From NCBI RefSeq assembly GCF_003704095.1, contig NW_020843379.1:372001-436000 (forward strand): 64,000 bases of DNA, written 5' to 3'. Made by a program: the position numbers and the translations under genes. The DNA is from Pocillopora damicornis (taxonomy: Eukaryota). Of the stretch, positions 5,176 to 57,473 are shown one piece after another. The notes beneath the pieces are model-generated. The model had not been told where the DNA came from and did no database searches. It saw only the letters and a program-made list of their open reading frames with translations. Each line of letters opens with the position of its first letter. The stretch's first letter is position 1.

Positions 5176-5425
5176 CTAAATAAATAGCTCACACTTCGAC
5201 TGGTTATTGCGAGGAAAATTGAGTGCATGTTGCTTAACTTTTTCTGTGTTGAGATAATTCCATGCAAGGTATAATTTTCGTTGCTGACAGTTGTTGTTGT
5301 TGATGGCTTCNNNNNNNNNNTGTGCTCCAATGTCTGAGATGTTATTTATTGAGAGGTCTAACGTGCGTAGCTGACGGTTGTTGTTGTTGATGGCTTCAGC
5401 CAAGTGCTGTGCTCCAATGTCTGAG
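5176..5425 (-). CDS. C-terminal LRR fragment of an NLR (5' part lost in a gap)
   Basis: SDIGAQHLAEAINNNNRQLRTLDLSINNIS... RI-like LRRs ending at a stop at 5176; same repeat as in the neighbouring NLRs. Confidence 0.75.
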
Positions 5426-5526
5426 ANNNNNNNNNNNNNNNNNNNNNNNNNNNNNNNNNNNNNNNNNNNNNNNNNNNNNNNNNNNNNNNNNNNNNNNNNN
5501 NNNNNNNNNNNNNNNNNNNNNNNNNN

Positions 5527-8048
5527 TATACGATTGTCACAATCAACGAGCGGCAAAGAAAACCTACTGGATGTACGCTGCCCTTGGTGTGAATGGAATT
5601 CTTGTCATTACTATTCTGGTTGAAATCGTTTACCTTTTTTCACGGGCATNNNNNNNNNNNNNNNTCATGCAAGACTCAATGTTTCTTAAAACCCACTTCG
5701 GTCTCAACCAACACCTAGGTGGAAGGGACGAAACAATTCCACTCACTGAAACAGACACTGAAGAACTCCAAGAACGAAAGTTTCACGAATTCATCAAACG
5801 NNNNNNNNNNNNNNNNNNNNNNNNNNNNNNNNNNNNNNNNNNNNNNNNNNNNNNNNNNNNNNNNNNNNNNNNNNNNNNNNNNNNNNNNNNNNNNNNNNNN
5901 NNNNNNNNNNNNNNNNNNNNNNNNNNNNNNNNNNNNNNNNNNNNNNNNNNNNNNNNNNNNNNNNNNNNNNNNNNNNNNNNNNNNNNNNNNNNNNNNNNNN
6001 NNNNNNNNNNNNNNNNNNNNNNNNNNNNNNNNNNNNNNNNNNNNNNNNNNNNNNNNNNNNNNNNNNNNNNNNNNNNNNNNNNNNNNNNNNNNNNNNNNNN
6101 NNNNNNNNNNNNNNNNNNNNNNNNNNNNNNNNNNNNNNNNNNNNNNNNNNNNNNNNNNNNNNNNNNNNNNNNNNNNNNNNNNNNNNNNNNNNNNNNNNNN
6201 NNNNNNNNNNNNNNNNNNNNNNNNNNNNNNNNNNNNNNNNNNNNNNNNNNNNNNNNNNNNNNNNNNNNNNNNNNNNNNNNNNNNNNNNNNCTCAAGGAAC
6301 TGTTAATTCAGTCCGAGTATTTCCCAACAGATCAGCTAGATGACAAGGTCTGGAATCACCTGCTTGAGAACCCCAAAGGTGTACTCATACTTTTTGACGG
6401 ATTCGACGAATTTAAACATGACGCAAACNNNNNNNNNNNNNNNNNNNNNNNNNNNNNNNNNNNNNNNNNNNNNNNNNNNNNNNNNNNNNNNNNNNNNNNN
6501 NNNNNNNNNNNNNNNNNNNNNNNNNNNNNNNNNNNNNNNNNNNNNNNNNNNNNNNNNNNNNNNNNNNNNNNNNNNNNNNNNNNNNNNNNNNNNNNNNNNN
6601 NNNNNNNNNNNNNNNNNNNNNNNNNNNNNNNNNNNNNNNNNNNNNNNNNNNNNNNNNNNNNNNNNNNNNNNNNNNNNNNNNNNNNNNNNNNNNNNNNNNN
6701 NNNNNNNNNNNNNNNNNNNNNNNNNNNNNNNNNNNNNNNNNNNNNNNNNNNNNNNNNNNNNNNNNNNNNNNNNNNNNNNNNNNNNNNNNNNNNNNNNNNN
6801 NNNNNNNNNNNNNNNNNNNNNNNNNNNNNNAGCAACTTGAATTTGCTCTCGCTGTGTTATGTCCCGGTCAACAGCTTTATCATCGGCACAAGTCTGTTAG
6901 AAATCAAGAGATTACAAGAGTCCGAAAGTTCCGCTGACTTTACCCTCCCTTCCAAATTAACATTGATATACAATATTGCAGTGAAANNNNNNNNNNTTAA
7001 ACATACAATAGAATTGTGCAATATTTTGTTTCCTCTCGAACATAATTTGCCCAAAGATGTACTGGAGAAGTTCAAGATACTAGGAAAAGTAGCCTTTGAC
7101 GGAATCAAAGATGGAAAACTGATCCTTGGNNNNNNNNNNNNNNNNNNNNNNNNNNNNNNNNNNNNNNNNNNNNNNNNNNNNNNNNNNNNNNNNNNNNNNN
7201 NNNNNNNNNNNNNNNNNNNNNNNNNNNNNNNNNNNNNNNNNNNNNNNNNNNNNNNNNNNNNNNNNNNNNNNNNNNNNNNNNNNNNNNNNNNNNNNNNNNN
7301 NNNNNNNNNNNNNNNNNNNNNNNNNNNNNNNNNNNNNNNNNNNNNNNNNNNNNNNNNNNNNNNNNNNNNNNNNNNNNNNNNNNNNNNNNNNNNNNNNNNN
7401 NNNNNNNNNNNNNNNNNNNNNNNNNNNNNNNNNNNNNNNNNNNNNNNNNNNNNNNNNNNNNNNNNNNNNNNNNNNNNNNNNNNNNNNNNNNNNNNNNNNN
7501 NNNNNNNNNNNNNNTGAAGACGAACGAGAATTAGCAGTAACATTAATTAAATGTTTAAACGAAAATAGAAGAATGAAGTCAGAAGCACAGAGAAAACTTA
7601 AACAAATGAACTTTAATTGTGTAAATTTTTATCGTTGTCACATCACAGCTGTTGATTGCTCTTCGTTTGTAAATGTAATTAGTGTTCGACAAATTTCACA
7701 TTTAGATTTGAAATTCAATAACATTGATCCATTAGGTTGTCTTGAGATTTGTAAATTGTTAAAATGTAGTGAATCTCAACTGAGCTGGTTAAACCTCACA
7801 AGCAATCAATTGACAGATGAAGCAGCAAAGTATTTAGAGGACGCCATCAACAACAACAACTGTCAGCTACGCACGTTAAACCTCACAGACAATAACNNNN
7901 NNNNNNNNNNNNNNNNNNNNNNNNNNNNNNNNNNNNNNGCACTTGGCTGAAGCCATCAACAACAACAACTGTCAGCTACACACGTTAAACCTTACATACA
8001 ATGACATCTCAGACATTGGAGCACAGCACTTGGCTGAAGCCATCAACA
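5527..8048 (+). CDS. Connexin-like-4TM/NACHT/LRR NLR paralogue (gapped, partial)
   Basis: Sequenced islands give, in order: DCHNQRAAKKTYWMYAALGVNG (EL2/TM4), GVLILFDGFDE (Walker B), LLSLCYVPV and AFDGIK (helical and winged-helix region), then 29-aa LRRs. Colinear with the 10216-12875 copy. Confidence 0.8.
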
Positions 8049-8148
8049 NNNNNNNNNNNNNNNNNNNNNNNNNNNNNNNNNNNNNNNNNNNNNNNNNNNN
8101 NNNNNNNNNNNNNNNNNNNNNNNNNNNNNNNNNNNNNNNNNNNNNNNN

Positions 8149-9658
8149 CACTTTGACCGCAATCTTGTATATCGTGGTTAATTTGGAAGGCAGGGTAACA
8201 CTGCCGGAACTTTCGAACTGCATTATTTCTGACAGACTTGAGCACATGATGAAGCTGTNNNNNNNNNNNNNNNNNNNNNNNNNNNNNNNCATGTTGCTGC
8301 TGATGTGTCGCCATAGCGTTTCGCCTGCTTCCTTGTCATCTCCAGCGAATTTATCGATATACTCTTTAATTTGCTCGGTTGAGAAGCCAAGGATTTCAAN
8401 NNNNNNNNNTTTGAAGCGGCTTTTTATCTTCAATGCTTCTGGGATAAGTGGACGCCGCGGTTATGTTTTCGTTATGTTCGAATTCGTCGAATCCGTCAAA
8501 AAGCATGAGAACACCTTCAGGGTTCTTNNNNNNNNNNNNNNNNNNNNNNNNNNNNNNNNNNNNNNNNNNNNNNNNNNNNNNNNNNNNNNNNNNNNNNNNN
8601 NNNNNNNNNNNNNNNNNNNNNNNNNNNNNNNNNNNNNNNNNNNNNNNNNNNNNNNNNNNNNNNNNNNNNNNNNNNNNNNNNNNNNNNNNNNNNNNNNNNN
8701 NNNNNNNNNNNNNNNNNNNNNNNNNNNNNNNNNNNNNNNNNNNNNNNNNNNNNNNNNNNNNNNNNNNNNNNNNNNNNNNNNNNNNNNNNNNNNNNNNNNN
8801 NNNNNNNNNNNNNNNNNNNNNNNNNNNNNNNNNNNNNNNNNNNNNNNNNNNNNNNNNNNNNNNNNNNNNNNNNNNNNNNNNNNNNNNNNNNNNNNNNNNN
8901 NNNNNNNNNNNNNNNNNNNNNNNNNNNNNNNNNNNNNNNNNNNNNNNNNNNNNNNNNNNNNNNNNNNNNNNNNNNNNNNNNNNNNNNNNNNNNNNNNNNN
9001 NNNNNNNNNNNNNNNNNNNNNNNNNNNNNNNNNNNNNNNNNNNNNNNNNNNNNNNNNNNNNNNNNNNNNNNNNNNNNNNNNNNNNNNNNNNNNNNNNNNN
9101 NNTTCTCGGAGTTCTTCAGTGTCTCTTTCAGTGAGTGGCATAGTTTCGTTCGTGCCATCCAGGTGTTGGTTGAGACTTAGATGGGTTTTTAGAAACTTTG
9201 AGTCTTCCATGAAACTCCTCTCAATGCATGCCCGTGAAAAAAGGTAGACGGTTTCAACCAGAGTCCCAGCAACAATAATTCCATTCACCGCAAGGACAGC
9301 GTACATCCAGAAGGTTTTCTTTACAGCTCGTTGATTGTGACAGTCGAGTAAAGTAGAGTTTTGGGCGTTGTCAGATGAATTGCTTGGCTGAGTGGTTCCA
9401 TCGGTTAAATAACAGTTAAACTGAGNNNNNNNNNNNNNNNNNNNNNNNNNNNNNNNNNNNNNNNNNNNNNNNNNNNNNNNNNNNNNNNNNNNACAATTCT
9501 TATCGATAGTTGAGAGCAGTAAGCGATAAAAAGCTTGTTTCCAGTTGATGACGCAGTATCTTGGTCGAGCAGATGATCGACTTTGGGTCTTACTATTTGG
9601 GAGTAAATAGCACATACAAATGCGATAAGGAGTAAATTGAGGATTACGAAGCCATAGA
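8149..9658 (-). CDS. Connexin-like-4TM/NACHT NLR paralogue (gapped, partial)
   Basis: Islands translate to YGFVILNLLLIAFVCAIYSQ...GNKLFIAYCSQLSIRIV, FNCYLTDG...DCHNQRAVKKTFW, NPEGVLMLFDGFDE and EILGFSTEQIKEY. Frame changes occur only across N-gaps. Confidence 0.8.
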
Positions 9659-10215
9659 NNNNNNNNNNNNNNNNNNNNNNNNNNNNNNNNNNNNNNNNNN
9701 NNNNNNNNNNNNNNNNNNNNNNNNNNNNNNNNNNNNNNNNNNNNNNNNNNNNNNNNNNNNNNNNNNNNNNNNNNNNNNNNNNNNNNNNNNNNNNNNNNNN
9801 NNNNNNNNNNNNNNNNNNNNNNNNNNNNNNNNNNNNNNNNNNNNNNNNNNNNNNNNNNNNNNNNNNNNNNNNNNNNNNNNNNNNNNNNNNNNNNNNNNNN
9901 NNNNNNNNNNNNNNNNNNNNNNNNNNNNNNNNNNNNNNNNNNNNNNNNAGCTTGAATAAACAGCTAATGCGGCTTTGGTCTATTTGTAGCGCATGATAGT
10001 ACTTTTATTTGATTGGCTTTTTTGGAAACTTTTAACTGTCAAAACGACAATGGATTCTTTGTGCATGTTATTGTTCTACATAAGAAACACTTGTCAGAAG
10101 CTGAGACGGTTATAGNNNNNNNNNNNNNNNNNNNNNNNNNNNNNNNNNNNNNNNNNNNNNNNNNNNNNNNNNNNNNNNNNNNNNNNNNNNNNNNNNNNNN
10201 NNNNNNNNNNNNNNN

Positions 10216-12875
10216 GAGATGTTATTTCCTGTGAGGTCTAACGTGCGAAGCTGACAGTTGTTGTTGTTGATAGCTTCAGCTAAATACTTTACTGCTTCAT
10301 CTGTCAATTGATTTCCNNNNNNNNNNAACCAGCTCAGTTGAGATTCCCTATATTTTAACAATTTACAAATCTCATAGCAACCTAAGGAATCAATGTTATT
10401 AGCACTCAAATTTAAATGTGAAATTTGTGGAACATTAATTACATTTACTAACGAAGGGCAATCAACAGCTGTGAGGTGACAATCAATAAAATTTACAAAA
10501 TTAAAGTTCAATTGTTGAAGTTTTTCCTGTGCTTCTAACTTCATTCTACTATTTTCGTTTAAACATTTTATTAATGTCATTGCTAAATCTTTTTCGTCGC
10601 TAGTTGGCCAGCAGGTTACTTTCCTTTTTACTTCTTTATCTGTCCACTGTTCGGTGTAGCTTTCTTCTTTAGTTTTCACAGGAAGAAGGTTAGTAATAAT
10701 TTCGTTTGATAGATGAATTTTATCCTCCATTAATCCTGCTAGAAACTGAAAAACCAGCTGCCATTTGCCGTTCTTGATGTTCTCGGAAACAAAGCTTTTT
10801 AATTCTGTGTCACTCATGTTGTTTGCTAGGTGCCTCGCAGCGAAAAACTCTTGNNNNNNNNNNTGAATGAAACAGAATTGTGGTTCAGGATTAAGTGGGT
10901 CCGTTTTACGGTCGGGTAAGCGGTGGAAAAGAGCGCTGTCTTCCATTCCGCTTACTTCGCTTCCTCCAAGGATCAGCTCTCCGTTTTTGATTCCTTCAAA
11001 CGCTACTCTTCCTAGTTTTCTGAATATTTCCAGCACTTGGGTGGGCAAATTATGTCCGACTGGAAACGGATTATGGCACAATTCTCTTGTATGTTTAAAA
11101 TAAAACACCTGTACTGCAATCTTGTATATCGATGTTAATTTGGCAGGAAGGGTAACGTCATCGGAACTTTCGGACTCCATTATTTGTAACAGACTTGTGC
11201 AGATGATGAAGCTGTTGACCGGCACATAACATAGCGTGAGCAAATTAATGTTGCTGCTGATGTGTCGCCATAGTGTTTCGCCAACTGTCTTTTTATCTCC
11301 GGCCAATTTGTAGACATGTTCTTTAACTTGTTCCAATGAAAATCCTAGAATTTCGAACGTTTTGTCAAACTTGAGGTGTTTGATGCTCGACAAAGCCGAA
11401 GGTCTCGTGGTTGTCAAAATTGAGGCATCTTTTAGGAGTTTCCCGGTCACAAGCCACTGGTAAAGGATTTGGAGCGGCTTTTTCTCTTCAATGCACTTGG
11501 GATGAGCAGGTTCTCGGTCCATGTTTGCGTTAAGTTTAAATTCGTCGAATCCGTCAAAAAGTATGAGTACACCTTCAGAGTTCTCAATCAAGTGATTCCA
11601 GACCTCGTCATCTAGGTGATTTGTTGGGAAATGCTCGGACTGAATCAACAGTTCCCTGAGGCTAAGGTTGTTCTCCGATTTGAATCTTCTAAATTTCACG
11701 AAGAAAGCGGCATCAAAAGGGATTTTGGCTTCAGGTGACGCCCAGTCTCTGAGAAGTTTGGTACAACATAATGTCTTGCCGATTCCGGNNNNNNNNNNGA
11801 TTAACACTTTCTTATTTTCAACATTTAGGAGGTCTTCCAGGCTTTTCGGTTGTGAGTTTTCCCCGCGCGACATTGGATAAATCTTGAGTTGTTCCTCTCT
11901 GTTCTCAGTAAAGACATACGTAGCTCTGTTCGGAATCACAANNNNNNNNNNGTAAATTTGATCCAAAGTCAAATGTTTTACTATTGTGTTTTCGCCTGGA
12001 TTACCTGTAAAAGGTGATTGGAGTGCTAATAGTTCTTGGGTGTCTTGAAAAATTATTTTCTTTGTGCGTTTGATGAATTTTTTAAACTTTCGTTTTTGGT
12101 GTTGGTTGAGTCTTAGATGGGTTTTTAGAAACCTTGAGTCTTGCATGAAACCCCTTTCAATGCATGCCCGCGAAATAAGGTAGACGGTTTCAACCAGTAT
12201 GCCAGCGACATGAATTCCATTCATCACAAGGACAGCGTACATCCAGAAGGTTTTCTTTTCCGCTCGTTGATTGTGACAGTCGTGTAAAGTAGAGTTTTGA
12301 GCGTTGTCGGATAAATTCCTCGGCTGAGTGGTTCCATCGGTTAAATAACAGTTAAACTTCGAGTAAAACTTTAAAGGATAAAGCAACTGAGTTTGTAGGA
12401 TGATGAAAATTACTCCTAAAACAATTCTTAACAATAGTTGACAGCAGTAAGCGAAAAAGAGCCTGTTTCCAGTTGATGACGCAGTCTCCTGGTCAAGCAG
12501 CTGTCTCTCTTGATCATCGTTACGGATGCCTCGCGACAGTTGATCGACTTTGGCGCTCCCTATTTTAGAGTAAATAGCACATACAAATGCAATAAGGACT
12601 AGATTGAGGATTACGAAGCCAAAGATAGGAAAACCGTATTTGTTGTACTGATTCATATATTTCTCGTAACATTTTCCACGGACGATGTCGACGTTTTCAC
12701 TCTTCGCTCCGCCACAGCGAAAATCAAACCTGGACTCGTTGTTTTCCATGTCGACGAATATGGCGAGGAAGATGACACTGATCAGAATCCAAAAAACCAC
12801 TGCCACATAGTGAACTTTGTTGAAAGCTTTTGGATCCAAATATACTAAAATCTTTTCCATTGATGCGGTTGACAT
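10216..12875 (-). CDS. NLR with N-terminal connexin-like four-TM domain, NACHT NTPase and RI-like LRRs (3' end runs into a gap)
   Basis: Intronless ORF of more than 880 aa. Four hydrophobic segments in aa ~22-235; Walker A VLI....GIGKT; Walker B VLILFDGFDE; LTTTRP; LCYVPV; F.....QEFFAA; then LRRs. Confidence 0.92.
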
Positions 12876-12912
12876 TGTTACTCACTGTGTTAGAATGCTG
12901 ATCAATTGTGGA

Positions 12913-13075
12913 GCTTAATTAACCAGCTAATGCCACCTTGGTCTAATTATAGAGCGTGATAGTACTTTTATTTGATTGGATTTGAAACTTGCAACTGTCA
13001 AAACAACGATTGATTATTTATGCATTTTATCGTTTGACGTAAGAAACAGTTGTCAGAAACTGAGACGGATATAGA
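12913..13075 (-). promoter_or_regulatory. Conserved upstream non-coding block of the NLR duplication unit (second copy at ~9950-10115)
   Basis: CAGCTAATGC...GATAGTACTTTTATTTGATTGG...AACTGTCAAAAC...TAAGAAACA.TTGTCAGAA.CTGAGACGG.TATAG lies 5' of two minus-strand NLR copies. Confidence 0.6.
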
Positions 13076-16000
13076 TATTGGCATATGTGGCCATATACGG
13101 GACCTCGTTTCCTCCCACCCCCTCCCCCGGGCTTATTTCCATCCCCTCCCTCTTCTCCTTTTCTATTAATGTTGCTGCCGAGGTCCTGAAGAGAAACTCG
13201 TTCTACCGATGTAGCTCATTTTGAAGGTTGAAGACTACACTCTGAGTCGTTAGGTGTGGATATTTCATCTGGGTGGTAATTGTTTGGAAAGAAAATTGTA
13301 ACACTTGGCTGATTCAAGTCACGATTGGTCGAGGTTTTGCATCTGATTAAATTTGAGGGTGGTGTGAGTTTTCCTAACTTATCCCAAACAGCGGTTAGTG
13401 AAGCAAGACTAATGCAAATCAAATTATTATCGACTGCGTCGTAAAAATACGGCCCTGTTTCGATCCATGTTCTCATCTTATAACAATCATGATAGGTGTT
13501 AGGGTCTAGAACTACGTTGGCACGTTCTTTGTTCTTTGGTGGATGCTCCATGCATTTCGGAGCCGAAAACTCACCGATTAATTGCTTAACTTAAAACGAA
13601 GAGGTCATATATCCGAAAATAATTACAATAAGATCAGACAAACAGCTTCCAAGAATCTACCATCACCCTTGTCGAAAATGAGACTAAAGAGATTGCTAAG
13701 TTCCGAAACTTCACGTTTTATTTTATAAATCCACTTGATCTCCCTCTCTCTCACACCGCTCAAGTCTCACGCTCTAGTCTCTCTAACTTTAAATATATTA
13801 TATGATTCTATCGTTAAATCATCTGTCACTTATTGCAAAAAAAATCAACCGGAAATCAATTAACGCTGAATAATCTCTCACACCGTGAAAACCAAGTGAT
13901 CCTTCCAAAATCCTCCACCCATACCCCTCCCCCCTTTACAGGTGATAGTGATGACTCCTCCTCTCTTACTTGGCTCTTTCCGATTTTCTTTGCTGCTTTT
14001 TAAAGTTTTCAATGATAACATTTTTGCAGCTAACTGTATAACAGAATAGTCTGAAAGACTAGGGCAAGGAGTCTTTGGATGGGCAAACAAATTCTTCTTG
14101 TCAGCACCTTAGGACATGTATAAAGAATAGTGTGGAGAATATGCATACTGATGTTAGGGTGTAAAGGGTTAAGAAAATGAAAGACATCTTCCTTTGCAGG
14201 TCTTTTATGAGAGGTTATTGACAGACCTGCTAATTCTTTTACAGCAGTTTCACTAATTAAATTTATAATTTTAGTTTTCAAGGAAATTGTCTTTAAGTTG
14301 GGTGCTGACTTATACAATTTTTTAAGGTGTCAGGGAAACGATAGCGAAATTTATATCATAGAGTTAGGGGAAGGTTTAGGGGCTTAGTACCCGGCGCAAA
14401 TCTATCCAGATCTAGCTGACTCAACGAGGTAAAAAATGTAATTATACAGCCAAGTTCCGTTCGAGTGTATCAGTCAACCTTTTGTCTGGTTAGCAGGTAA
14501 TTTAGTGTTAAAAAACTGAGTTGAAAATGTAAATTGGCCACTGTAATTGTTAAAAGGCTGACATTTCGAGTGTCAGCCCTTCGTCAGAGCGATAGACGAT
14601 TGAATAATTTGCAAAGAGCGAATTTAACATTTCAAAAATCCTAAACATCGATTGGCCAACGTGACAAATGTCCCACGCTTTTATCACGTGATAGTTTGAT
14701 GGTTTTGTTGCCACTTGACTGGTCTCCTTTGCAACCACTTTGCTTCAATAACATCCCCCCCTTCCCTTCCTCAAAAAAAAACAAACACTGCTGTGAATAA
14801 GACCACTTGATTGGGTCATAGAAAGCAACACTAAAACTTTAACCTCTGCAGGAATATGATTTCAGACCAAATTACAGTCCACACATTTCAATTAGCATCA
14901 TACATCATCAATGAAAATACAAGTATCTAAAGTTGGTGGCTATAATACAAGCCATCAGAATGTTTTAAAACTTGCAACATGGTTGCAAAAATGTGCAGAA
15001 CTTGCAACAGGAGTACTGCAACAAAAAATTTAAAGAGAGAAAATTAGTAACCTTGTTATCCATTAATTTGTTTCATACACTTATTAAGTAGCTTAAAAAT
15101 TACAATGCTCCTGCTTAATTATAGCATCAGTCTGAGTTTTTTTAATAATAAATATTTTAGTAGGTGAAACCATCACCAAGAGTCAAATTTGGGGAGTACA
15201 ATGTATCTGATTTCAATTGTATTGAGAGTGTAATATGTATTAGAACACAGACTTGTTAATCTTGACTGGAGTGTAAATGTAAGTTTCATACAAAACACAG
15301 TGCATAGAAGAGCTGGAATGCTTTTGTGATTAATAAACTGTTATCAAACAGCCATATTATCAGTTTTGTTGTTTATTGAATTTCATTGTTTGTATCCCTT
15401 TGAAGTTATTTGTGTGTAATTTTTGCTGCAAATTTTTTTTTTCCTGAGTTACTTATTAATCTTACATGAAGAATTAATCCAAATATTATTTTTGTTTGAC
15501 TCTTTAATCCCAATAGTGACTTCAGCATATAATTTCCCCTACAATATCAACCCTGCGACAAATTTTAAGGTCATGAGAATAAAGGAAATGATCACCAATC
15601 AAAGCAGCTCTTAGTTGTTAAACAAATTCTCCTTGTCAGCACCTTAAAAAAATGTTTATCAAACAGTATGAAGGGTTAATTAAAATATAATATTTGAATA
15701 ATATTTTGAAACAGAACCTTTCTGAAAAAGGATGGAAATTTTGAAGTCAAAAGTCTTATCCATTAAAGAATTACATTTTTGCTTTACATAGTATGTCTGA
15801 CATTGATGCTTCAATTTTCTTAATGCAACTTTACTGGAACTGCAACAGTGTAAGGACACATTAAGCTGGAGAAAGCTATAGAGCAGATTTGTAGTAAAAA
15901 TATCAGTTTTATTTCAGAGTTCAGGAGTCTAAAAATTATATTACAACTCAATAAATTATTACTATTAACCTGCTGATTTCATCATTGTCAAGCTCTGCCA

Positions 16001-16547: not shown

Positions 16548-18404
16548 TCATCTTTCTGCCATGAACACCGACTGACACCATTGCACAAACCATTCACACA
16601 TATCTGATATAAGCTCATGATTCACTCTGCCACGCAGCTTTAGTTCATGGTCTGCACCTTCCACCCAGTGCATTTTCCAGTCATTTGCCATTCTGTTCAG
16701 AGCTGTATCCATTAAATCGGGCCTGCAGTATGGATCTTTTCTGCCACTTATAAACAATGCAGGCAATCCAAGATGGAGAAGTGAAGATACTCGAATCTCC
16801 GAGGTCTTACGTGGAGGATGTAAAGGGTATGACAAACAAGCAACGCCAAATACAAAGTTTGTGGTCAAACTACTGTTTGAAGCTACCTCAGCAGCAACAC
16901 GTGCACCCATTGAACGGCCTATAAATAAACGCAACTTCAAAATCATCATTTTGCAAGGGGCATGGCAGGGTTTATTCCTGCATGATGTGGTGACAGGAGA
17001 ACATTGTAAAACTGTCAGTGAGGAGAAAATAAATTATCAACATCTGAAGAAAAAATCGCTCAGATCATCAAAATAAGCTGGTGAATATTAAGTAGTTGCC
17101 CATGTCAACAACCTGCATTGGATTTCATGTCAGTTTGATGTTTCCTTTTTTACTATGATCCAATCCATGATCTAATACACTGCATGATCCCAGCTGTGAT
17201 CACATCCATGATGTGATCTGTGATTAGATCTGTGTTTTGTCGACACTGGTGTCATAGCTAAAGAATTCACAAGCCTCCCATCTCTAATTCCTAATAAACA
17301 ACCTGCATAGACCATCTGGTTTCCTTACCAAAGAGCTATTATGTATGAGAACCTTATGTACCTGCTATGATGCACATGTTGATTGGAAACTCTTCAAAAT
17401 TCCTCAGGAACTCCTACAAATACAACATTCAATTATAATTTAACTCTTAAATATGACTGTGAAAATATGAAAATCATATATCTGCACTGCGGTAAAAGAA
17501 ACGAATAGAAGTAATCCTCACATTTATGAATACTGCTGAACTAGTAGTTGAAATAAGACAAGGATCACTCATATTCGTTTCTTCAATCGCAGTGCACACA
17601 TATGATTTTCATATATTCAAAGTCATCATTCACCACTTGGATGGTTTATTTGGATCCAACATAATGACCAGCTCCCAGTTGGCTTGTTAGATCAGTTGGT
17701 AGAGTGCTACACCAGTATCGCAGAGGTCATGGGTTCAAATCCCNNNNNNNNNNGAATTTTTGTCAGGCCTTATTTCAACTTCTAGTTCAGTAGTGTTCAT
17801 AACTGCGAGGACTGGTTATATTCGTTTCTTAAGTATGAGTTTTTGCTGAGATTATAAATAGTAGGAAGAAAGTAGCTCTAATTATTGAGTTTAGAGCAGC
17901 AGTCAGAGAAAAAAATCGTGCAGTTTGTAGGTGTTAAACTAAACCAATCCGTAAATTAAGTAAACAAAAGCGACATTCTTGACTCCGTGTCGTAAATTAC
18001 ATTACAAAGCTCGTACCACGTTACAATAAATTAATCGCCAACCACGAACAAGAAAGTTACTCTAACCACAACTGCTGTGAAACACTGTATCCTATACTTG
18101 AAGTTTCTTGTCCTGCAGGTGAATCTCAAACACAGTATTCCCGTGCTTGCGAGATGAGTAGCTAGTTTCTCTAGATGGAGGTAATTCATATCCCCTCCGG
18201 CCCCGTGTGTCAGAATCACAGCACAACCGTTCCACGACGCCTCGCATGGAAAATTAAACACGCCATCCAGTTCACGATCTTCAACTGGAATTTTAACTAT
18301 AACCTGTTTAATACAAATAGAGAAGGCAATGAACGAACAGAATCAGCTACAGGGGAATTTTTTCTATGCAGATCGGTATATACCTTCCGCAGATTGCGCG
18401 CCAT
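16548..18404 (-). CDS. TEX30: Testis-expressed protein 30-like alpha/beta hydrolase, 4 exons (18404-18384, 18303-18067, 17413-17362, 16918-16548)
   Basis: ILTHGAGGDMN, LCLRFTC, GRSMG nucleophile elbow, CLSYPLHPP, SGRKD, GADH. GT-AG introns join in frame. Confidence 0.9.
17452..17830. mobile_element. Repeat with inverted terminal segments and an internal tRNA-like (A/B box) sequence
   Basis: 17455-17556 is reverse-complemented by 17562-17626 and by 17769-17830. 17681-17743 has an A-box-like TAGATCAGTTGG and a B-box GGTTCAAATCC. Confidence 0.6.
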
Positions 18405-46947: not shown

Positions 46948-47373
46948 TTCTTCAAAAGATGAATAAATGATTCAAGAAAGCATTTGCTAGAAATTTTTAG
47001 CCCCAAAAAGCTTAAAAACAGGGACTAGATAGGTCTGTTATCATAAAGGTTGCTTTCACACCAATCCCAAGCCATGATGTGAAGATGTTTACTTACTATG
47101 AGTTATGGTTTTGCTGCAGTGCTCCTTGGAAGTGTCAGACATGGATGATGATTTCTTGTGTTCTTTAAAAGATGAATAAATGATTCAAGAAAGCATTTGC
47201 TAGAAATTTTTAGCCCCAAAAAGCTTAAAAACAGGGACTAGATAGGTCTGTTATCATAAAGGTTGCTTTCACACCAATCCCAAGCCATGATGTGAAGATG
47301 TTTACTTACTATGAGTTATGGTTTTGCTGCAGTGCTTCTTGGAAATGTCGGACATGGATGATGATTTCATGTG
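46948..47373. repeat. Tandem 213-bp duplication spanning the COPS2 splice acceptor and start codon
   Basis: Near-identical units offset by 213 bp (acceptor AG at 47118-47119 and 47331-47332). Confidence 0.9.
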
Positions 47374-48676
47374 TGATGATGATGAAGATTATGACCTGGA
47401 GTACTCTGAAGACAGTGCCTCCGAGCCTGATGTGGATTTGGAAAACCAGTACTACAATTCAAAAGCCTTGAAAGAAGATGATCCTAATGCCTCATTGCAA
47501 AGCTTTCAGAAGGTTTTGGATCTTGAAACAGAAAAAGGTGAATGGGGATTCAAAGCACTGAAACAAATGATCAAGATCAACTTCAAGCTGGGCCATTATG
47601 ATGAGATGATGACCCGCTATCAGCAGTTGCTCACATACATAAAGAGTGCTGTCACAAGGAACCACTCTGAAAAGTCTATTAATTCCATCCTGGATTACAT
47701 TTCGACTTCAAAGCAAATGGAGTTGCTACAGAATTTCTACGAGACCACACTGGAAGCCTTGAAAGATGCAAAGAATGACAGACTGTGGTTTAAGACAAAC
47801 ACAAAGCTAGGAAAGTTGTACTTTGACAGAGGGGAATTCACCAAGCTGGCAAAAATCCTGAAACAACTGCATCAGTCTTGTCAGACAGATGAAGGAGAAG
47901 ATGATTTGAAGAAGGGAACTCAATTGCTAGAAATTTATGCTCTGGAGATCCAGATGTACACAGCTCAAAAAAATAACAAGAAGCTTAAAGCTTTGTATGA
48001 ACAGTCCCTTCACATCAAATCTGCTATTCCACATCCACTTATTATGGGGGTGATCAGGGAGTGTGGCGGGAAGATGCACTTACGGGAGGGAGACTATGGA
48101 GCAGCTCACACTGATTTCTTTGAGGCTTTTAAGAACTATGATGAGTCTGGAAGTGGAAGGCGCACAACTTGCCTGAAATACCTTGTCCTGGCCAACATGC
48201 TTATGAAATCTGGTATCAACCCTTTTGACTCTCAGGAAGCAAAACCTTACAAAAATGACCCAGAGATTCTAGCCATGACAAATCTCGTCAGTGCTTACCA
48301 GAATGATGATATCAATGAGTTTGAGAAAATTCTCAAAACCAACCGCAAGAACATAATGGATGATCCCTTTATCAGGGAACACATCGAAGATCTCTTAAGA
48401 AACATCAGGACACAAGTGCTTATCAAGCTGATTAAGCCATACACACGGATCCACATTCCATTTATATCCAAAGAGTTGAACATTGATACAGAAGAAGTGG
48501 AAAGCCTTCTGGTACAATGTATACTTGACAATACCATTCATGGCCGCATTGATCAGGTAAATCAACTTCTTGAACTGAACAGAACAACACAGAGTGTTGA
48601 TAGGTTCCAGGGACTGGATAGGTGGACCACACAGTTAAATTCGCTTCACACTACAGTCGTAAACAAGATTGCCTAA
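47345..48676 (+). CDS. COPS2: COP9 signalosome subunit 2, core CDS in a single exon
   Basis: [65 protein letters not shown] and a PCI C-terminus; very close to animal CSN2. Confidence 0.97.
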
Positions 48677-52693: not shown

Positions 52694-53638
52694 TCATTCT
52701 AAACCAGTATCACTTGTTTGCTCGCTGCGATATCGATATTGCCTGATCGTTTTCTTCACAGCATGCCTGACTTCTCTGATGCGCCAATAATAAAGCACTG
52801 GGTTCAGAGATGAATTGAAGAAGATTAAGGTGGCCGTGAATCCCTCGGCGACAGGCCAGACATTACCAGTAACAGCCTTCAACCCTGACACTATACTGTA
52901 CGGCAGATAACAGATCAGTAGTGTTAAATGAACCCAAAGCGCGCTTGATACGGTTTTCTTGTACCGCGCCATGTTCATTGGAGGGTTTTTATTTTCAAGT
53001 CCCTGGTTTAAAACGTTCTGGATTTTTGCCTGCTGCGCACAGAGTGTGTGGCAAATTTTTGCATAGCAAAACGTGGAAATAATAACACAAGTAAATATAC
53101 CTATGAGACAAACAAGATAGAAGAGATATCTATTCCTCAAGAATCGCGCAAAGCCATTTGCGATATTTACCGCCCAGAAAAATATCACAAATCTACGGAC
53201 CCGCGGAGCAGTCACAGTTTGTCGGTATCGCATTCCGAGCGACAAGGCGAGTAATCTGTCGACACTGATGAAGGTTAGAATAAAGAGAGACACTCCGCTT
53301 AGAACTGCACTTGTGATGTAGGTCACTTCCACGGTGAATTGGTAGATAGGCAAACGGTCAGTGAAAATAGAGATCGAATGCAGCGCTGCCAGTGGCTGAG
53401 AGATGAGACCGACGCACAAATCTGTGATCGCCAAATTGAGTATCAATAGGCGCGAAGGCGGATGAAAGCAGGATTCTCGTCGTAGCGCAATAAATATCAA
53501 CGTATTTCCAAGAGTGGCAGAGATGGAAAGGATAATATTTAAAACAGACAAAGCGACAAAAGAGTTGAAGACATGCGGAGAACTTTTGACCAGAAGGAAC
53601 AAGGGCGGTCGAGTTGCCACACTGTTGTTGTTCGCCAT
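52694..53638 (-). CDS. Class A (rhodopsin-like) GPCR, intronless; adenosine/melanocortin-receptor-like orphan
   Basis: Seven hydrophobic segments; GN in TM1, NLAITD, ISVDRL, CYLPY, NSSLNPVLYYWR. Confidence 0.92.
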   Translation of the reverse strand: MANNNSVATRPPLFLLVKSSPHVFNSFVALSVLNIILSISATLGNTLIFIALRRESCFHPPSRLLILNLAITDLCVGLISQPLAALHSISIFTDRLPIYQFTVEVTYITSAVLSGVSLFILTFISVDRLLALSLGMRYRQTVTAPRVRRFVIFFWAVNIANGFARFLRNRYLFYLVCLIGIFTCVIISTFCYAKICHTLCAQQAKIQNVLNQGLENKNPPMNMARYKKTVSSALWVHLTLLICYLPYSIVSGLKAVTGNVWPVAEGFTATLIFFNSSLNPVLYYWRIREVRHAVKKTIRQYRYRSEQTSDTGLE

Positions 53639-56558: not shown

Positions 56559-57473
56559 ATGGTAAATGAAACGGTGGCTTTGTTTATTCGCTCCAAAACT
56601 ACGCCATACGTTTTCAATTCCTTCATCGCACTGGCTTGTCTAAATATGGTATTGTTCTTTACGGCGAGTTTTGGAAACATCTTGATTGTACTCTCTTTAC
56701 GAAAGGAATCTCTACTTCATCCACCTTCGAGACTTCTTTTGCGTAATCTAGCCTTGACGGATCTGTTCGTTGGTCTCTTCACTCATCCATTAGCTACCCT
56801 GCACTCCATTTCCATTCTTGTTGAAAATGTGCCAATTTTTCAGTTCACTGTGCGGTCGAGTTATGTTAGCAGTGCCATCTTAAGCGGAATGTCTCTCTTT
56901 GTACTGACCTTGATCAGTGTGGACAGATTACTCGCTCTCTCTCTCGGGATGAAATACAGGCAAGAGGTGACTGCGAGACGTGTTCGTGGTTTTGTGATAT
57001 TTTTCTGGGTGTTAAATACTGCGAATGGTCTTGCACTGTTGTCTCGGGAGCGATTTGTCTTTTACATATTCAGTGCATCGAGCATCTTTCTTTGCATGAT
57101 AATTTCGACTTTTTGCTACGCGAAAATTTACCGCATCCTTCGTTTGCAAGAAATGAAAGTTCGCACCACTTGTTCCCAAAAACAAAAAAACAAAAACTCT
57201 CTGCTTAGCGTCAAGCGCTACAAGAATACTGTGTCAAACGCGCTTTGGGTTCACTTGACATTGCTGGCTTGTTATTTCCCGTACAGTATAGTGTCGGGAT
57301 TAAAAGCGGTGACTAAAGAAACTTGGGCAGTCGCTGAAGGCTTCACTGGGACTCTGATATTCTTCAATTCATCACTGAATCCTCTTCTTTATTATTGGCG
57401 CATTAAGGAAGTGAGACAGGCTTTATTGGAAATGATCAGGCAATACCGAAGTTTACTTTTGAGGGAAACTTGA
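56559..57473 (+). CDS. Class A GPCR, intronless; paralogue of 52694-53638
   Basis: GN, NLALTD, ISVDRL, CYFPY, NSSLNPLLYYWR; long stretches identical to the neighbour. Confidence 0.92.
   Translation: MVNETVALFIRSKTTPYVFNSFIALACLNMVLFFTASFGNILIVLSLRKESLLHPPSRLLLRNLALTDLFVGLFTHPLATLHSISILVENVPIFQFTVRSSYVSSAILSGMSLFVLTLISVDRLLALSLGMKYRQEVTARRVRGFVIFFWVLNTANGLALLSRERFVFYIFSASSIFLCMIISTFCYAKIYRILRLQEMKVRTTCSQKQKNKNSLLSVKRYKNTVSNALWVHLTLLACYFPYSIVSGLKAVTKETWAVAEGFTGTLIFFNSSLNPLLYYWRIKEVRQALLEMIRQYRSLLLRET

What the first reader, a model, noticed from the sequence alone, without database searches (positions are those of the whole stretch)
12156..12875. Connexin-like four-TM channel domain fused to a NACHT-LRR receptor
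Seen: aa 1-240 has four TM segments and matches connexin landmarks in order. EL1 'ENNESRFDFRC...KCYEKY' compares with connexin DEQSxFxC...VCYD. TM3 'RLFFAYCCQLLLRIVLGVIFIILQTQLLYP' compares with LLxTYxxSxxFRxxFExxFxxxQYxLYG. EL2/TM4 'FNC...HDCHNQRAEKKTFW...LVETVYL' compares with VxC...VDCFxSRPTEKTxF...xELxYL. Only C54, C69, C176 and C200 are present, which are the first and third Cys of each loop. The missing middle pair is the pair that forms one disulfide in connexins, so the loss is coherent. Established: connexins are hexameric large-pore channels conventionally regarded as chordate-specific; NACHT domains oligomerise on ligand sensing; plant CC-NLR resistosomes form Ca2+ channels; LRRC8 is a precedent for a large-pore fold fused to LRRs. 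Inference: these proteins are membrane-anchored NLRs whose effector is a built-in channel (ion/ATP release or lytic death). The connexin fold may pre-date chordates as an immune effector. I cannot confirm whether this has been described before.
Basis: partly seen in the sequence, partly recalled or inferred. Interest (0 to 1): 0.95.

Follow-up and report, generated by a model that had tools for sequence, protein, structure and literature searches.

The report
Coral connexin-like NLR, already described
This stony-coral immune-receptor gene does begin with a connexin-type membrane channel domain, but a June 2026 preprint already described and bench-tested this gene family, using among others a protein from this same genome.

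Summary
Window 10110-12875 (- strand) is one intron-less ORF of at most 921 aa, with some masked codons. Residues 1-240 form a four-helix membrane domain, followed by a basic linker, a NACHT NTPase and a short LRR array.

Evidence that the membrane domain is a connexin homologue:
- Pfam Connexin matches at E 2.5e-6, just below the gathering score.
- A 24-sequence family profile hits only connexins in the PDB; the best is Cx31.3 at E 8.6e-10.
- For the AF2 model (pLDDT 83), all 50 listed Foldseek matches are connexins.
- C54, C69, C176 and C200 are invariant in 121 relatives and align to the first and third Cys of each connexin loop.

The genome matches Pocillopora damicornis and holds at least 11 full-length copies.

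Butler et al. (bioRxiv 10.64898/2026.06.13.731801) describe anthozoan "CxL-NLRs". They list a P. meandrina relative that is 92% identical over residues 1-245. They show that relatives form ATP-permeable hemichannels gated by voltage and CO2. One of these is pmCxL30, which is encoded in this genome.

- This copy and its closest P. verrucosa and P. meandrina relatives carry R138 where pmCxL30 has the carbamylated K140. I therefore predict a CO2-insensitive channel that is still voltage-gated.
- RNA-library contigs cover the ORF without splice joints.

Whether NLR activation gates the pore remains untested. The scan's other notes on this finding are re-reads of this same stretch, not other DNA.

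The parts
10110..12875 (-). Whole intron-less ORF of the connexin-like NLR. It is at most 921 aa, and several codons plus the last ~33 codons are masked.
   Evidence: ORF list. No splice joints in RNA-library contigs. The best relative is P. verrucosa 'protein NLRC3', 96% identical over residues 1-245.
12156..12875 (-). Connexin-like (CxL) four-helix channel domain, aa 1-240.
   Evidence: Pfam PF00029 E 2.5e-6. Family profile against PDB: best hit Cx31.3, E 8.6e-10. AF2 pLDDT 82.9. All listed Foldseek matches are connexins. VIA Z 13.4-14.7 to connexins.
12840..12869 (-). Predicted N-terminal helix (aa 3-12), the counterpart of the connexin pore-lining and gating helix.
   Evidence: DSSP on the AF2 model; pLDDT is only 59-71 here. 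The MST(A/P)S extension is shared with the P. verrucosa and P. meandrina relatives.
12741..12818 (-). TM1 (aa 20-45).
   Evidence: AF2 helix and hydropathy.
12627..12740 (-). Outer loop 1 (aa 46-83), with C54, C69 and sequon N46.
   Evidence: C54 and C69 are invariant. They align to the first and third EL1 Cys of Cx31.3. Sequon.
12516..12626 (-). TM2 and its cytoplasmic extension (aa 84-120).
   Evidence: AF2 helix.
12381..12491 (-). TM3 (aa 129-165). It contains R138 in the motif RLFFAY, where pmCxL30 has the carbamylated K140 (KLFLAY).
   Evidence: Pairwise alignment to pmCxL30. Motif table in the preprint's supplement. K in 95 and R in 11 of 121 relatives.
12267..12380 (-). Outer loop 2 (aa 166-203): a beta hairpin with C176, C200 and sequons N187 and N194.
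   Evidence: AF2 strands 173-179 and 195-202. The cysteines are invariant among close relatives and align to the first and third EL2 Cys.
12159..12266 (-). TM4 (aa 204-239), ending in R236, the counterpart of pmCxL30 R232.
   Evidence: R in 106 of 121 relatives.
11304..11792 (-). NACHT NTPase domain. Walker A is partly masked (GIGKT is visible). A Walker B-type DGFDE and a TTR sensor motif are visible.
   Evidence: Pfam PF05729 E 1e-25, 91 bits against a cut-off of 26.7. Motifs read from the translation.
10548..10853 (-). NLR helical domain HD2.
   Evidence: Pfam PF17776 E 7.2e-5, below the gathering score.
10113..10430 (-). Short array of ribonuclease-inhibitor-type LRRs, about 3-4 repeats. 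The end lies in or just after a 100-base masked run.
   Evidence: Pfam LRR_6 E 8.5e-4. Repeats are visible in the translation. The masked run is 10116-10215.
12876..13155 (-). 5' flank and probable 5' UTR. Part of it is duplicated in front of the next tandem copy.
   Evidence: RNA-library contigs reach 13,079-13,155 and nothing lies beyond about 13,200. Window 9949-10115 aligns to 12912-13074 (alignment mean column identity 79%).
7972..9948 (-). Tandem paralogue B. It is heavily masked; CxL and NACHT fragments are visible, and it appears interrupted.
   Evidence: Translations. Own-genome profile matches at C14:381163-381656.
5409..8050 (+). Inverted paralogue C. It is heavily masked and converges on copy B.
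   Evidence: Translations. Own-genome profile match at C14:377523-377711 on the + strand.

Best explanation
This is a Pocillopora damicornis member of the anthozoan connexin-like NLR (CxL-NLR) family.

Shown here: the first 240 residues are a true, divergent connexin homologue with four membrane helices, two disulfide-type Cys pairs in the outer loops, and both termini on the cytosolic side. A basic juxtamembrane linker, a NACHT NTPase and a short LRR array hang from TM4 in the cytosol.

Shown for relatives only, by Butler et al. 2026: CxL domains, with or without NACHT, reach the plasma membrane. They form large-pore hemichannels that release ATP and glutamate on depolarisation, and they do not form gap junctions.

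Inferred for this copy:
1. It assembles into a connexin-like ring and works as a hemichannel.
2. Because it has R138 in place of the carbamylated lysine (K140 in pmCxL30), it should be voltage-gated but not opened by CO2 through the TM3-TM4 carbamate bridge.
3. The NACHT-LRR part senses a cytosolic ligand and modulates the pore or signals beside it. This third step is the least supported.
For: - Sequence: Pfam Connexin E 2.5e-6 and NACHT E 1e-25. PDB phmmer returns only gap-junction proteins.
- Family profile: the first 34 PDB hits are all connexins, the best being Cx31.3 at E 8.6e-10 across EL1 to TM4. 19 of 24 family members hit PF00029 at E<0.01, and no other family is hit by more than one member.
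- Fold: AF2 pLDDT 82.9, pTM 0.75. All listed Foldseek matches are connexins at probability 1.00. VIA ranks 1-7 are connexins, Z 13.4-14.7, with 16-20% identity.
- Family size: 434 relatives, named ones from Pocillopora, mostly with NACHT and LRR. At least 11 full-length copies in this genome.
- Published work: family description, hemichannel assays and the K140R/R232A results. A 92%-identical P. meandrina relative, A0AAU9W6B5, is listed in their table. pmCxL30 is encoded in this genome.
- This copy: K140 aligns to R138 and R232 to R236. R138 is shared with the P. verrucosa and P. meandrina relatives.
- Expression: contigs from polyA and oligo-dT RNA libraries cover the ORF, stop in the 5' flank and show no joints.
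Against: - This copy's Pfam score (27.9 bits) is below the gathering score (31.3), and the Pfam match covers only TM3 to TM4.
- Fold comparison alone does not separate connexins cleanly from other large-pore channels: LRRC8A Z 13.2, pannexins 11-12.8.
- No functional test exists for this copy.
- The LRR array is short. The stop codon lies in sequence that duplicates the neighbour's 5' flank, and the codons before it are masked, so the true C-terminus is unknown.
- RNA evidence comes from assembled contigs at 97% likeness or more, in a family with paralogues about 90% identical.
- No experiment so far links NACHT activation to gating.
Confidence: 0.85

Rival explanations
1. The connexin-like domain serves in vivo mainly as a membrane anchor and pre-formed oligomerisation scaffold. 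It concentrates NACHT-LRR units at the plasma membrane, and signalling runs through other partners rather than through ion or ATP flux.
For: No data link NLR activation to the pore; the preprint tested only voltage and CO2. The linker after TM4 is long and basic, like a membrane-proximal tether.
Against: Relatives with a NACHT domain still conduct ATP and glutamate in HeLa cells. Pore-related connexin features are kept: the N-terminal helix, and the TM3 and TM4 gating residues in most paralogues. The four loop cysteines are invariant.
Confidence: 0.1
2. The domain is not a connexin homologue. It would be a convergent or innexin/pannexin/LRRC8-type large-pore four-helix fold, or a generic 4-TM protein such as claudin, tetraspanin or MS4A.
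For: VIA Z-scores for LRRC8A (13.2) and pannexins (11-12.8) lie close to those for connexins. Two Cys per loop is the innexin number.
Against: Sequence-based searches find only connexins: Pfam, PDB phmmer and the family profile at E 8.6e-10. Identity in the structural alignments is 16-20% to connexins and about 10% to LRRC8 and pannexins. CD20 and peripherin score Z about 8, and claudin does not appear. The preprint's HHpred reports 99.95% probability to 6L3U and no links to innexins.
Confidence: 0.03
3. This particular copy is a decaying product of local tandem and inverted duplication. Its LRR array is truncated and its stop codon is borrowed, so it no longer works as a receptor even though the family does.
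For: The ORF ends in sequence that duplicates the neighbour's 5' flank. It has only about 3-4 LRRs, whereas many relatives are 1000-1300 aa long. The neighbouring copies B and C look fragmented.
Against: The frame is open across 2.7 kb. All visible NTPase motifs are intact. A P. meandrina relative of 901 aa has a similar length. RNA-library contigs cover the ORF. R138 and the N-terminal extension are conserved in three species.
Confidence: 0.1

Closest known systems
Anthozoan connexin-like NLRs (CxL-NLRs), Butler et al., bioRxiv 10.64898/2026.06.13.731801 (June 2026)
   Same: Same architecture: an N-terminal connexin-like domain, NACHT and LRR in a single exon, with two Cys per loop. Same genus. 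Their table lists P. meandrina A0AAU9W6B5, which is 92% identical to this copy over residues 1-245. They count 13 copies in P. damicornis. I find at least 11 full-length copies plus fragments.
   Different: This exact copy was not assayed. It has R at the TM3 carbamylation position (RLFFAY against KLFLAY and KLFIAY in the tested pmCxL30 and pmCxL62).
pmCxL30 (UniProt A0A3M6TUS9, XP_027045126.1), a stand-alone CxL protein encoded in this same genome (G000:C2122)
   Same: 43% identical over the whole domain. Same four loop cysteines. R232 corresponds to R236.
   Different: It is 257 aa with no NACHT or LRR. It has K140 and is opened by CO2; this copy has R138.
Vertebrate connexins, especially the Cx31.3/GJC3 hemichannel (PDB 6L3T) and the four-cysteine epsilon clade (Cx23)
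   Same: Best sequence-profile and Foldseek match. Same helix order, the ExxYL-type end of TM4, and hemichannel rather than gap-junction behaviour.
   Different: Only 12-20% identity. Two rather than three Cys per loop, except in the epsilon clade. A longer, glycosylatable EL2. Fused to an NLR.
LRRC8/VRAC (SWELL1) channels
   Same: A large-pore four-helix domain followed by cytosolic LRRs. Fold similarity Z 13.2.
   Different: No detectable sequence relationship here. LRRC8 is pannexin-related and has no NACHT NTPase. It resembles this protein in how it works, not in family membership.
Plant CC-NLR resistosomes (ZAR1, NRC type)
   Same: An NLR whose N-terminal part makes a membrane channel after oligomerisation (from established knowledge).
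   Different: The channel part is a soluble coiled coil that inserts only on activation, and the NTPase is NB-ARC rather than NACHT. Here the channel domain is a constitutive integral membrane protein.

Membership tests
Connexin (PF00029 / IPR038359) | Significant sequence match to the family profile | tested here: inconclusive
   This copy scores E 2.5e-6 and 27.9 bits, below the gathering score of 31.3, and only TM3 to TM4 align. The family profile reaches E 8.6e-10 to Cx31.3 across EL1 to TM4, and the first 34 hits are all connexins. So this is a divergent member by profile, not by Pfam's single-sequence cut-off.
Connexin (PF00029 / IPR038359) | Four membrane helices with an N-terminal helix, an EL1 strand and helix, and an EL2 beta hairpin; fold match to solved connexins | tested here: met
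   AF2 model. All listed Foldseek matches are connexins, E 6e-6, probability 1.00. VIA Z 13.4-14.7 at ranks 1-7.
Connexin (PF00029 / IPR038359) | Three conserved Cys in each outer loop (six in all) | tested here: not met
   There are two per loop: C54 and C69, C176 and C200. By alignment they are the first and third of each loop. According to the preprint, epsilon-clade connexins also have two per loop, so this feature is not universal in the family.
Connexin (PF00029 / IPR038359) | Inter-loop disulfides | not testable with these tools
Only the secondary-structure placement of the four Cys agrees with the connexin pairs C54-C200 and C69-C176.
Connexin (PF00029 / IPR038359) | Hexameric ring forming a large pore | tested here: inconclusive
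   The four-copy complex job gave no verdict. The preprint reports plausible hexamer and heptamer AF3 models for relatives.
Connexin (PF00029 / IPR038359) | Channel conductance or permeation of small molecules | not testable with these tools
   Shown at the bench for the relatives pmCxL30, pmCxL62, edCxL50 and others, not for this copy.
NLR (NACHT-LRR) | NACHT NTPase with Walker A, Walker B and sensor motifs | tested here: met
   PF05729 E 1e-25, 91 bits against a cut-off of 26.7. GIGKT, DGFDE and TTR are visible in the translation. Four Walker A codons are masked.
NLR (NACHT-LRR) | C-terminal leucine-rich repeats | tested here: met
   LRR_6 scores E 8.5e-4, below its cut-off. About 3-4 ribonuclease-inhibitor-type repeats are visible in the translation. 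The array is short and its end is masked.
Anthozoan CxL-NLR (Butler et al. 2026) | N-terminal CxL domain with NACHT (and LRR) in one exon, in an anthozoan | tested here: met
   (no joints). A 92%-identical relative is in their list. The genome matches P. damicornis.
Anthozoan CxL-NLR (Butler et al. 2026) | TM3 Lys and TM4 Arg carbamate-bridge motif of the CO2-sensitive subset | tested here: not met
   R138 stands in place of K140, and there is no Lys between residues 110 and 168. R236 is present. The K-R pair is present in 84 of 121 close relatives.
Innexin / pannexin / LRRC8 | Sequence match to those families | tested here: not met
   No such hit appears in Pfam at E up to 10 for this copy, in Pfam at E<0.01 for the 24 members, or in the PDB profile search at E up to 1. 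There is only fold-level similarity, Z 10.5-13.2.

The most novel reading that the evidence does not exclude
Ligand sensing by the cytosolic NACHT-LRR part directly gates the fused connexin hemichannel. That would make it an animal counterpart of plant resistosome channels. In addition, the Pocillopora paralogues would have split into CO2-responsive forms (K138/R236, 84 of 121 relatives) and CO2-blind forms (for example R138 in this orthologue group in three species), so that different receptors couple danger signalling to different physiological states. The preprint tested neither point.
Probability: 0.3. Interest if true: 0.75.

Novelty: already known. Interest (0 to 1): 0.3.

Why it matters
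Connexins were long held to be a chordate invention. Finding them in corals, fused to NOD-like receptors, moves their origin back to the cnidarian-bilaterian ancestor and ties large-pore channels to innate immunity. Butler et al. made that point in June 2026 and backed it with assays, so this window adds no new kind of system. It offers three things:
- an independent computational replication on one gene;
- a natural K-to-R variant at the CO2-sensing position, usable as a ready-made test of the carbamate-bridge model;
- a concrete locus, with tandem and inverted copies, for studying how the family expands.

Tried and rejected
- Homo-oligomer prediction with four copies of residues 1-240 gave no verdict: median score 0.26 against a mark of 0.32. 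It counts neither for nor against assembly.
- I tested whether the outer loops are hypervariable among 121 close relatives, which would point to an extracellular sensing role. They are not. EL2 has the lowest mean entropy (0.53) and EL1 is average at 0.74, so I dropped the idea and did not run dN/dS.
- Fold comparison without sequence (VIA wide) cannot by itself separate connexins from LRRC8 or pannexins, because Z differs by only 1-2. The assignment rests on the sequence profiles.
- Searches for a description earlier than 2026 found only the 2026 preprint in the held library. It cites two earlier papers (its refs 32 and 33) that annotated connexin domains in cnidarian NLRs, but its reference list is not held, so I could not read them.
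- The masked stretches (Walker A, the winged-helix His region, the LRR end, and most of copies B and C) were left as they are. The true C-terminus and the state of the neighbouring copies therefore stay open.
- Model coordinates are not exposed, so Cys-Cys distances could not be measured.
Full report
**What is there.** Window 10110-12875 on the minus strand is a single open frame of 921 codons. A few short stretches are masked, and a 100-base masked run (10116-10215) sits just before the stop. Residues 1-240 carry no masked letters. Pfam finds Connexin (PF00029) in residues 122-234 at E 2.5e-6 and 27.9 bits. That is just under the gathering score of 31.3 and matches profile positions 126-224 of 225. 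In the rest of the protein Pfam finds NACHT (E 1e-25, 91 bits), the NLRC4-type HD2 helical domain (E 7e-5) and LRR_6. A plain phmmer search against all PDB sequences returns six hits, all gap-junction proteins.

**Is the connexin likeness real?** I aligned 24 divergent domain-length relatives, 25-69% identical to the query, taken from an exhaustive HMMER search that found 221 representatives at E<=0.001.
- A profile of this alignment hits 34 PDB sequences before any non-connexin appears, and all 34 are connexins. The best is the Cx31.3/GJC3 hemichannel at E 8.6e-10, aligned from EL1 to the end of TM4.
- Scanned singly, 19 of the 24 members hit PF00029 at E<0.01. No other family is hit by more than one member.
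- AlphaFold2 on this alignment gives a confident model (pLDDT 82.9, pTM 0.75). It has an N-terminal helix, four long helices, a strand and helix in loop 1, and a beta hairpin in loop 2.
- In Foldseek against the PDB, all listed matches are connexins at probability 1.00; the best is again Cx31.3.
- An independent all-against-all structural search places connexins at ranks 1-7 (Z 13.4-14.7, 16-20% identity). LRRC8A follows at Z 13.2, pannexins at 11-12.8 and innexin-6 at 10.5. CD20 and peripherin lie near Z 8, and no claudin is listed.

Fold alone places the domain among large-pore channels. Sequence profiles place it specifically with connexins.

**The cysteines.** Of the eight Cys in the domain, only C54, C69, C176 and C200 lie in the outer loops. 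They are invariant in 121 of 121 close relatives and invariant or nearly so across the divergent set. In the profile alignment to Cx31.3 they fall on the first and third Cys of each loop, and the middle Cys of each loop has no partner. In Cx26 the middle pair (C60-C174) forms one of the three disulfides; I state this from my own knowledge of the 2ZW3 structure. I could not measure distances in the model.

**Topology.** The three N-glycosylation sequons (N46, N187, N194) all lie in the predicted outer loops. The segment after TM4 is strongly basic. This fits cytosolic termini and a cytosolic NACHT-LRR.

**Organism and family.**
- The closest proteins are annotated NLRC3-, NLRP3-, NLRP12- or NLRC5-like, or left unnamed. 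The named ones come from Pocillopora verrucosa and P. meandrina, at 96% and 92% identity over residues 1-245. In all, 434 relatives pass E<=0.001, mostly with NACHT and LRR.
- The window's own assembly has 234,350,878 bases in 4,393 contigs.
So the genome is P. damicornis.
- The family profile finds at least 11 full-length copies plus fragments in this genome.

**Already described.** The bioRxiv preprint 10.64898/2026.06.13.731801 (Butler, Aniol, Hillman, Nijjar, Dale, Smith; 15 June 2026) reports this family.
- Connexin-like (CxL) domains occur in anthozoans, an annelid and a brachiopod.
- Corals carry 4-100 copies per genome, and 92% of anthozoan CxL proteins carry a NACHT domain.
- The genes are typically single-exon.
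- There are two Cys per loop, as in epsilon-clade connexins.
- Their HHpred top hit is 6L3U, the same protein as my best hit.
- In HeLa cells the proteins localise to the plasma membrane, release ATP and glutamate on depolarisation, and form no gap junctions.
- They report CO2 gating through a carbamate bridge, K140-R232 in pmCxL30.
- They state that connexin domains had already been annotated in cnidarian NLRs (their refs 32 and 33).

Their supplement counts 13 copies in P. damicornis and 54 in P. verrucosa. It lists A0AAU9W6B5, the P. meandrina relative that is 92% identical to this copy over residues 1-245. Their pmCxL30 is A0A3M6TUS9, the ORF I recovered from this same genome. UniProt already names it "Connexin N-terminal domain-containing protein".

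**What this copy adds.**
- Aligned to pmCxL30 (43% identity over the whole domain), K140 corresponds to R138 here and R232 to R236.
- The preprint's motif table gives KLFLAY and KLFIAY for the two CO2-sensitive Pocillopora proteins. This copy reads RLFFAY, and it has no lysine anywhere between residues 110 and 168.
- Among 121 close relatives, position 138 is K in 95, R in 11, T in 10, N in 4 and L in 1. The K-R pair occurs in 84.
- R138 is shared by the closest P. verrucosa and P. meandrina proteins, so it is a fixed feature of this orthologue group and not an assembly error.
- The engineered K140R mutant lost CO2 sensitivity but kept voltage gating. I therefore predict that this receptor is a CO2-insensitive, voltage-gated hemichannel. 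This is an inference. Other Lys/Arg pairs (K104 or K109 in TM2 with R236 or R241) cannot be excluded, because the preprint also describes TM2-TM4 motifs.
- The five-residue N-terminal extension (MSTAS) before the methionine where many relatives start is conserved in those two species. In one of them position 6 is not Met, which favours the first ATG as the start.

**Expression and gene structure.** Contigs assembled from polyA-selected, oligo-dT and random-primed RNA libraries of two studies lie along the whole ORF at 97% likeness or more.
- They extend 200-280 bases upstream of the ATG, to 13,079-13,155.
- They are absent beyond about 13,200 in all four runs.
- They show no joints.

This fits a transcribed, intron-less gene. 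The silent 5' flank argues against simple DNA carry-over. Contigs cannot prove a single full-length transcript, and paralogues may contribute.

**Surroundings.** The 165 bases between this ORF's stop and the next masked block align to this gene's own 5' flank (alignment mean column identity 79%). The duplicated unit therefore includes the probable promoter or 5' UTR. This copy's stop codon lies at the junction with the next copy's flank. That may mean the LRR array was cut short by the duplication; it has about 3-4 repeats, whereas many relatives are 1000-1300 aa long. The masked run prevents a decision, and I did not try to fill it. Downstream lie a second tandem copy (minus strand, about 7972-9948) and an inverted copy (plus strand, about 5409-8050) that converges on it. 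Both are heavily masked. The rest of the window carries ordinary genes: an alpha/beta hydrolase fragment, an F-box/LRR protein, a PCI-domain protein and two rhodopsin-type GPCRs.

**Mechanism, with status.**
- Shown here: connexin homology, four-helix topology, an intact visible NACHT, family expansion, and RNA-library coverage.
- Shown for relatives by others: plasma-membrane hemichannels permeable to ATP and glutamate, voltage and CO2 gating, and no gap junctions.
- Inferred: this copy forms such a hemichannel, it lacks the CO2 switch, and the cytosolic NACHT-LRR senses a ligand and modulates the pore or signals next to it.

The last step is the open question. It could be tested with NTPase and LRR mutants.

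**Dead ends.**
- The four-copy complex job gave no verdict.
- The outer loops are not more variable than the rest of the domain among close relatives, so there is no sign of an extracellular recognition role.
- The library holds no description earlier than 2026.

**Verdict.** Novelty: already known. Interest is low to moderate. It rests on the natural K-to-R variant and on the untested coupling between NLR and pore.

Noticed in passing
window 9949-10115 and 12912-13074: The stretch right after this gene's stop codon duplicates the gene's own 5' flank (alignment mean column identity 79%). The tandem unit therefore carries its probable promoter or 5' UTR, and the stop codon of this copy sits at the duplication junction.
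   Followed up: partly
window 5176-9948: Two further family copies lie here. One is tandem (minus strand, about 7972-9948) and one is inverted (plus strand, about 5409-8050). They converge near 7950-8050. A separate LRR tail lies on the minus strand at 5176-5556. This suggests an inversion or insertion inside a copy. Most of the region is masked.
   Followed up: partly
L001:246-1019 (G000:C2122:356145-356918, minus strand): The stand-alone 257-aa connexin-like protein assayed in the 2026 preprint as 'pmCxL30, Pocillopora meandrina' is identical to P. damicornis XP_027045126.1 / A0A3M6TUS9 and is encoded in this genome. The species label in the preprint's table does not match the accession.
   Followed up: yes
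window 12462-12464 (codon 138): Position 138 is K in 95, R in 11, T in 10, N in 4 and L in 1 of 121 close Pocillopora relatives. About a fifth of the paralogues therefore lack the lysine that the preprint shows to be needed for CO2 gating.
   Followed up: partly
window 12900-13100 (minus strand): The probable 5' UTR holds short upstream ATGs, for example a three-codon ATG-CAT-AAA-TAA. Whether they lie inside the transcript depends on the start site, which contigs cannot fix.
   Followed up: no
window 52694-53638 (-) and 56559-57473 (+): Two intron-less rhodopsin-family GPCR ORFs (7tm_1, E about 1e-24) lie in divergent orientation. Some database gene models in this family fuse CxL or NACHT with 7tm_1 (for example P0073), probably through merged neighbouring genes.
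   Followed up: no
window 16548-16949 (-), 43165-44538 (-), 47318-48676 (+): Ordinary neighbours: an alpha/beta-hydrolase (Abhydrolase_11) exon, an F-box/LRR protein and a PCI-domain (COPS2-like) protein.
   Followed up: no
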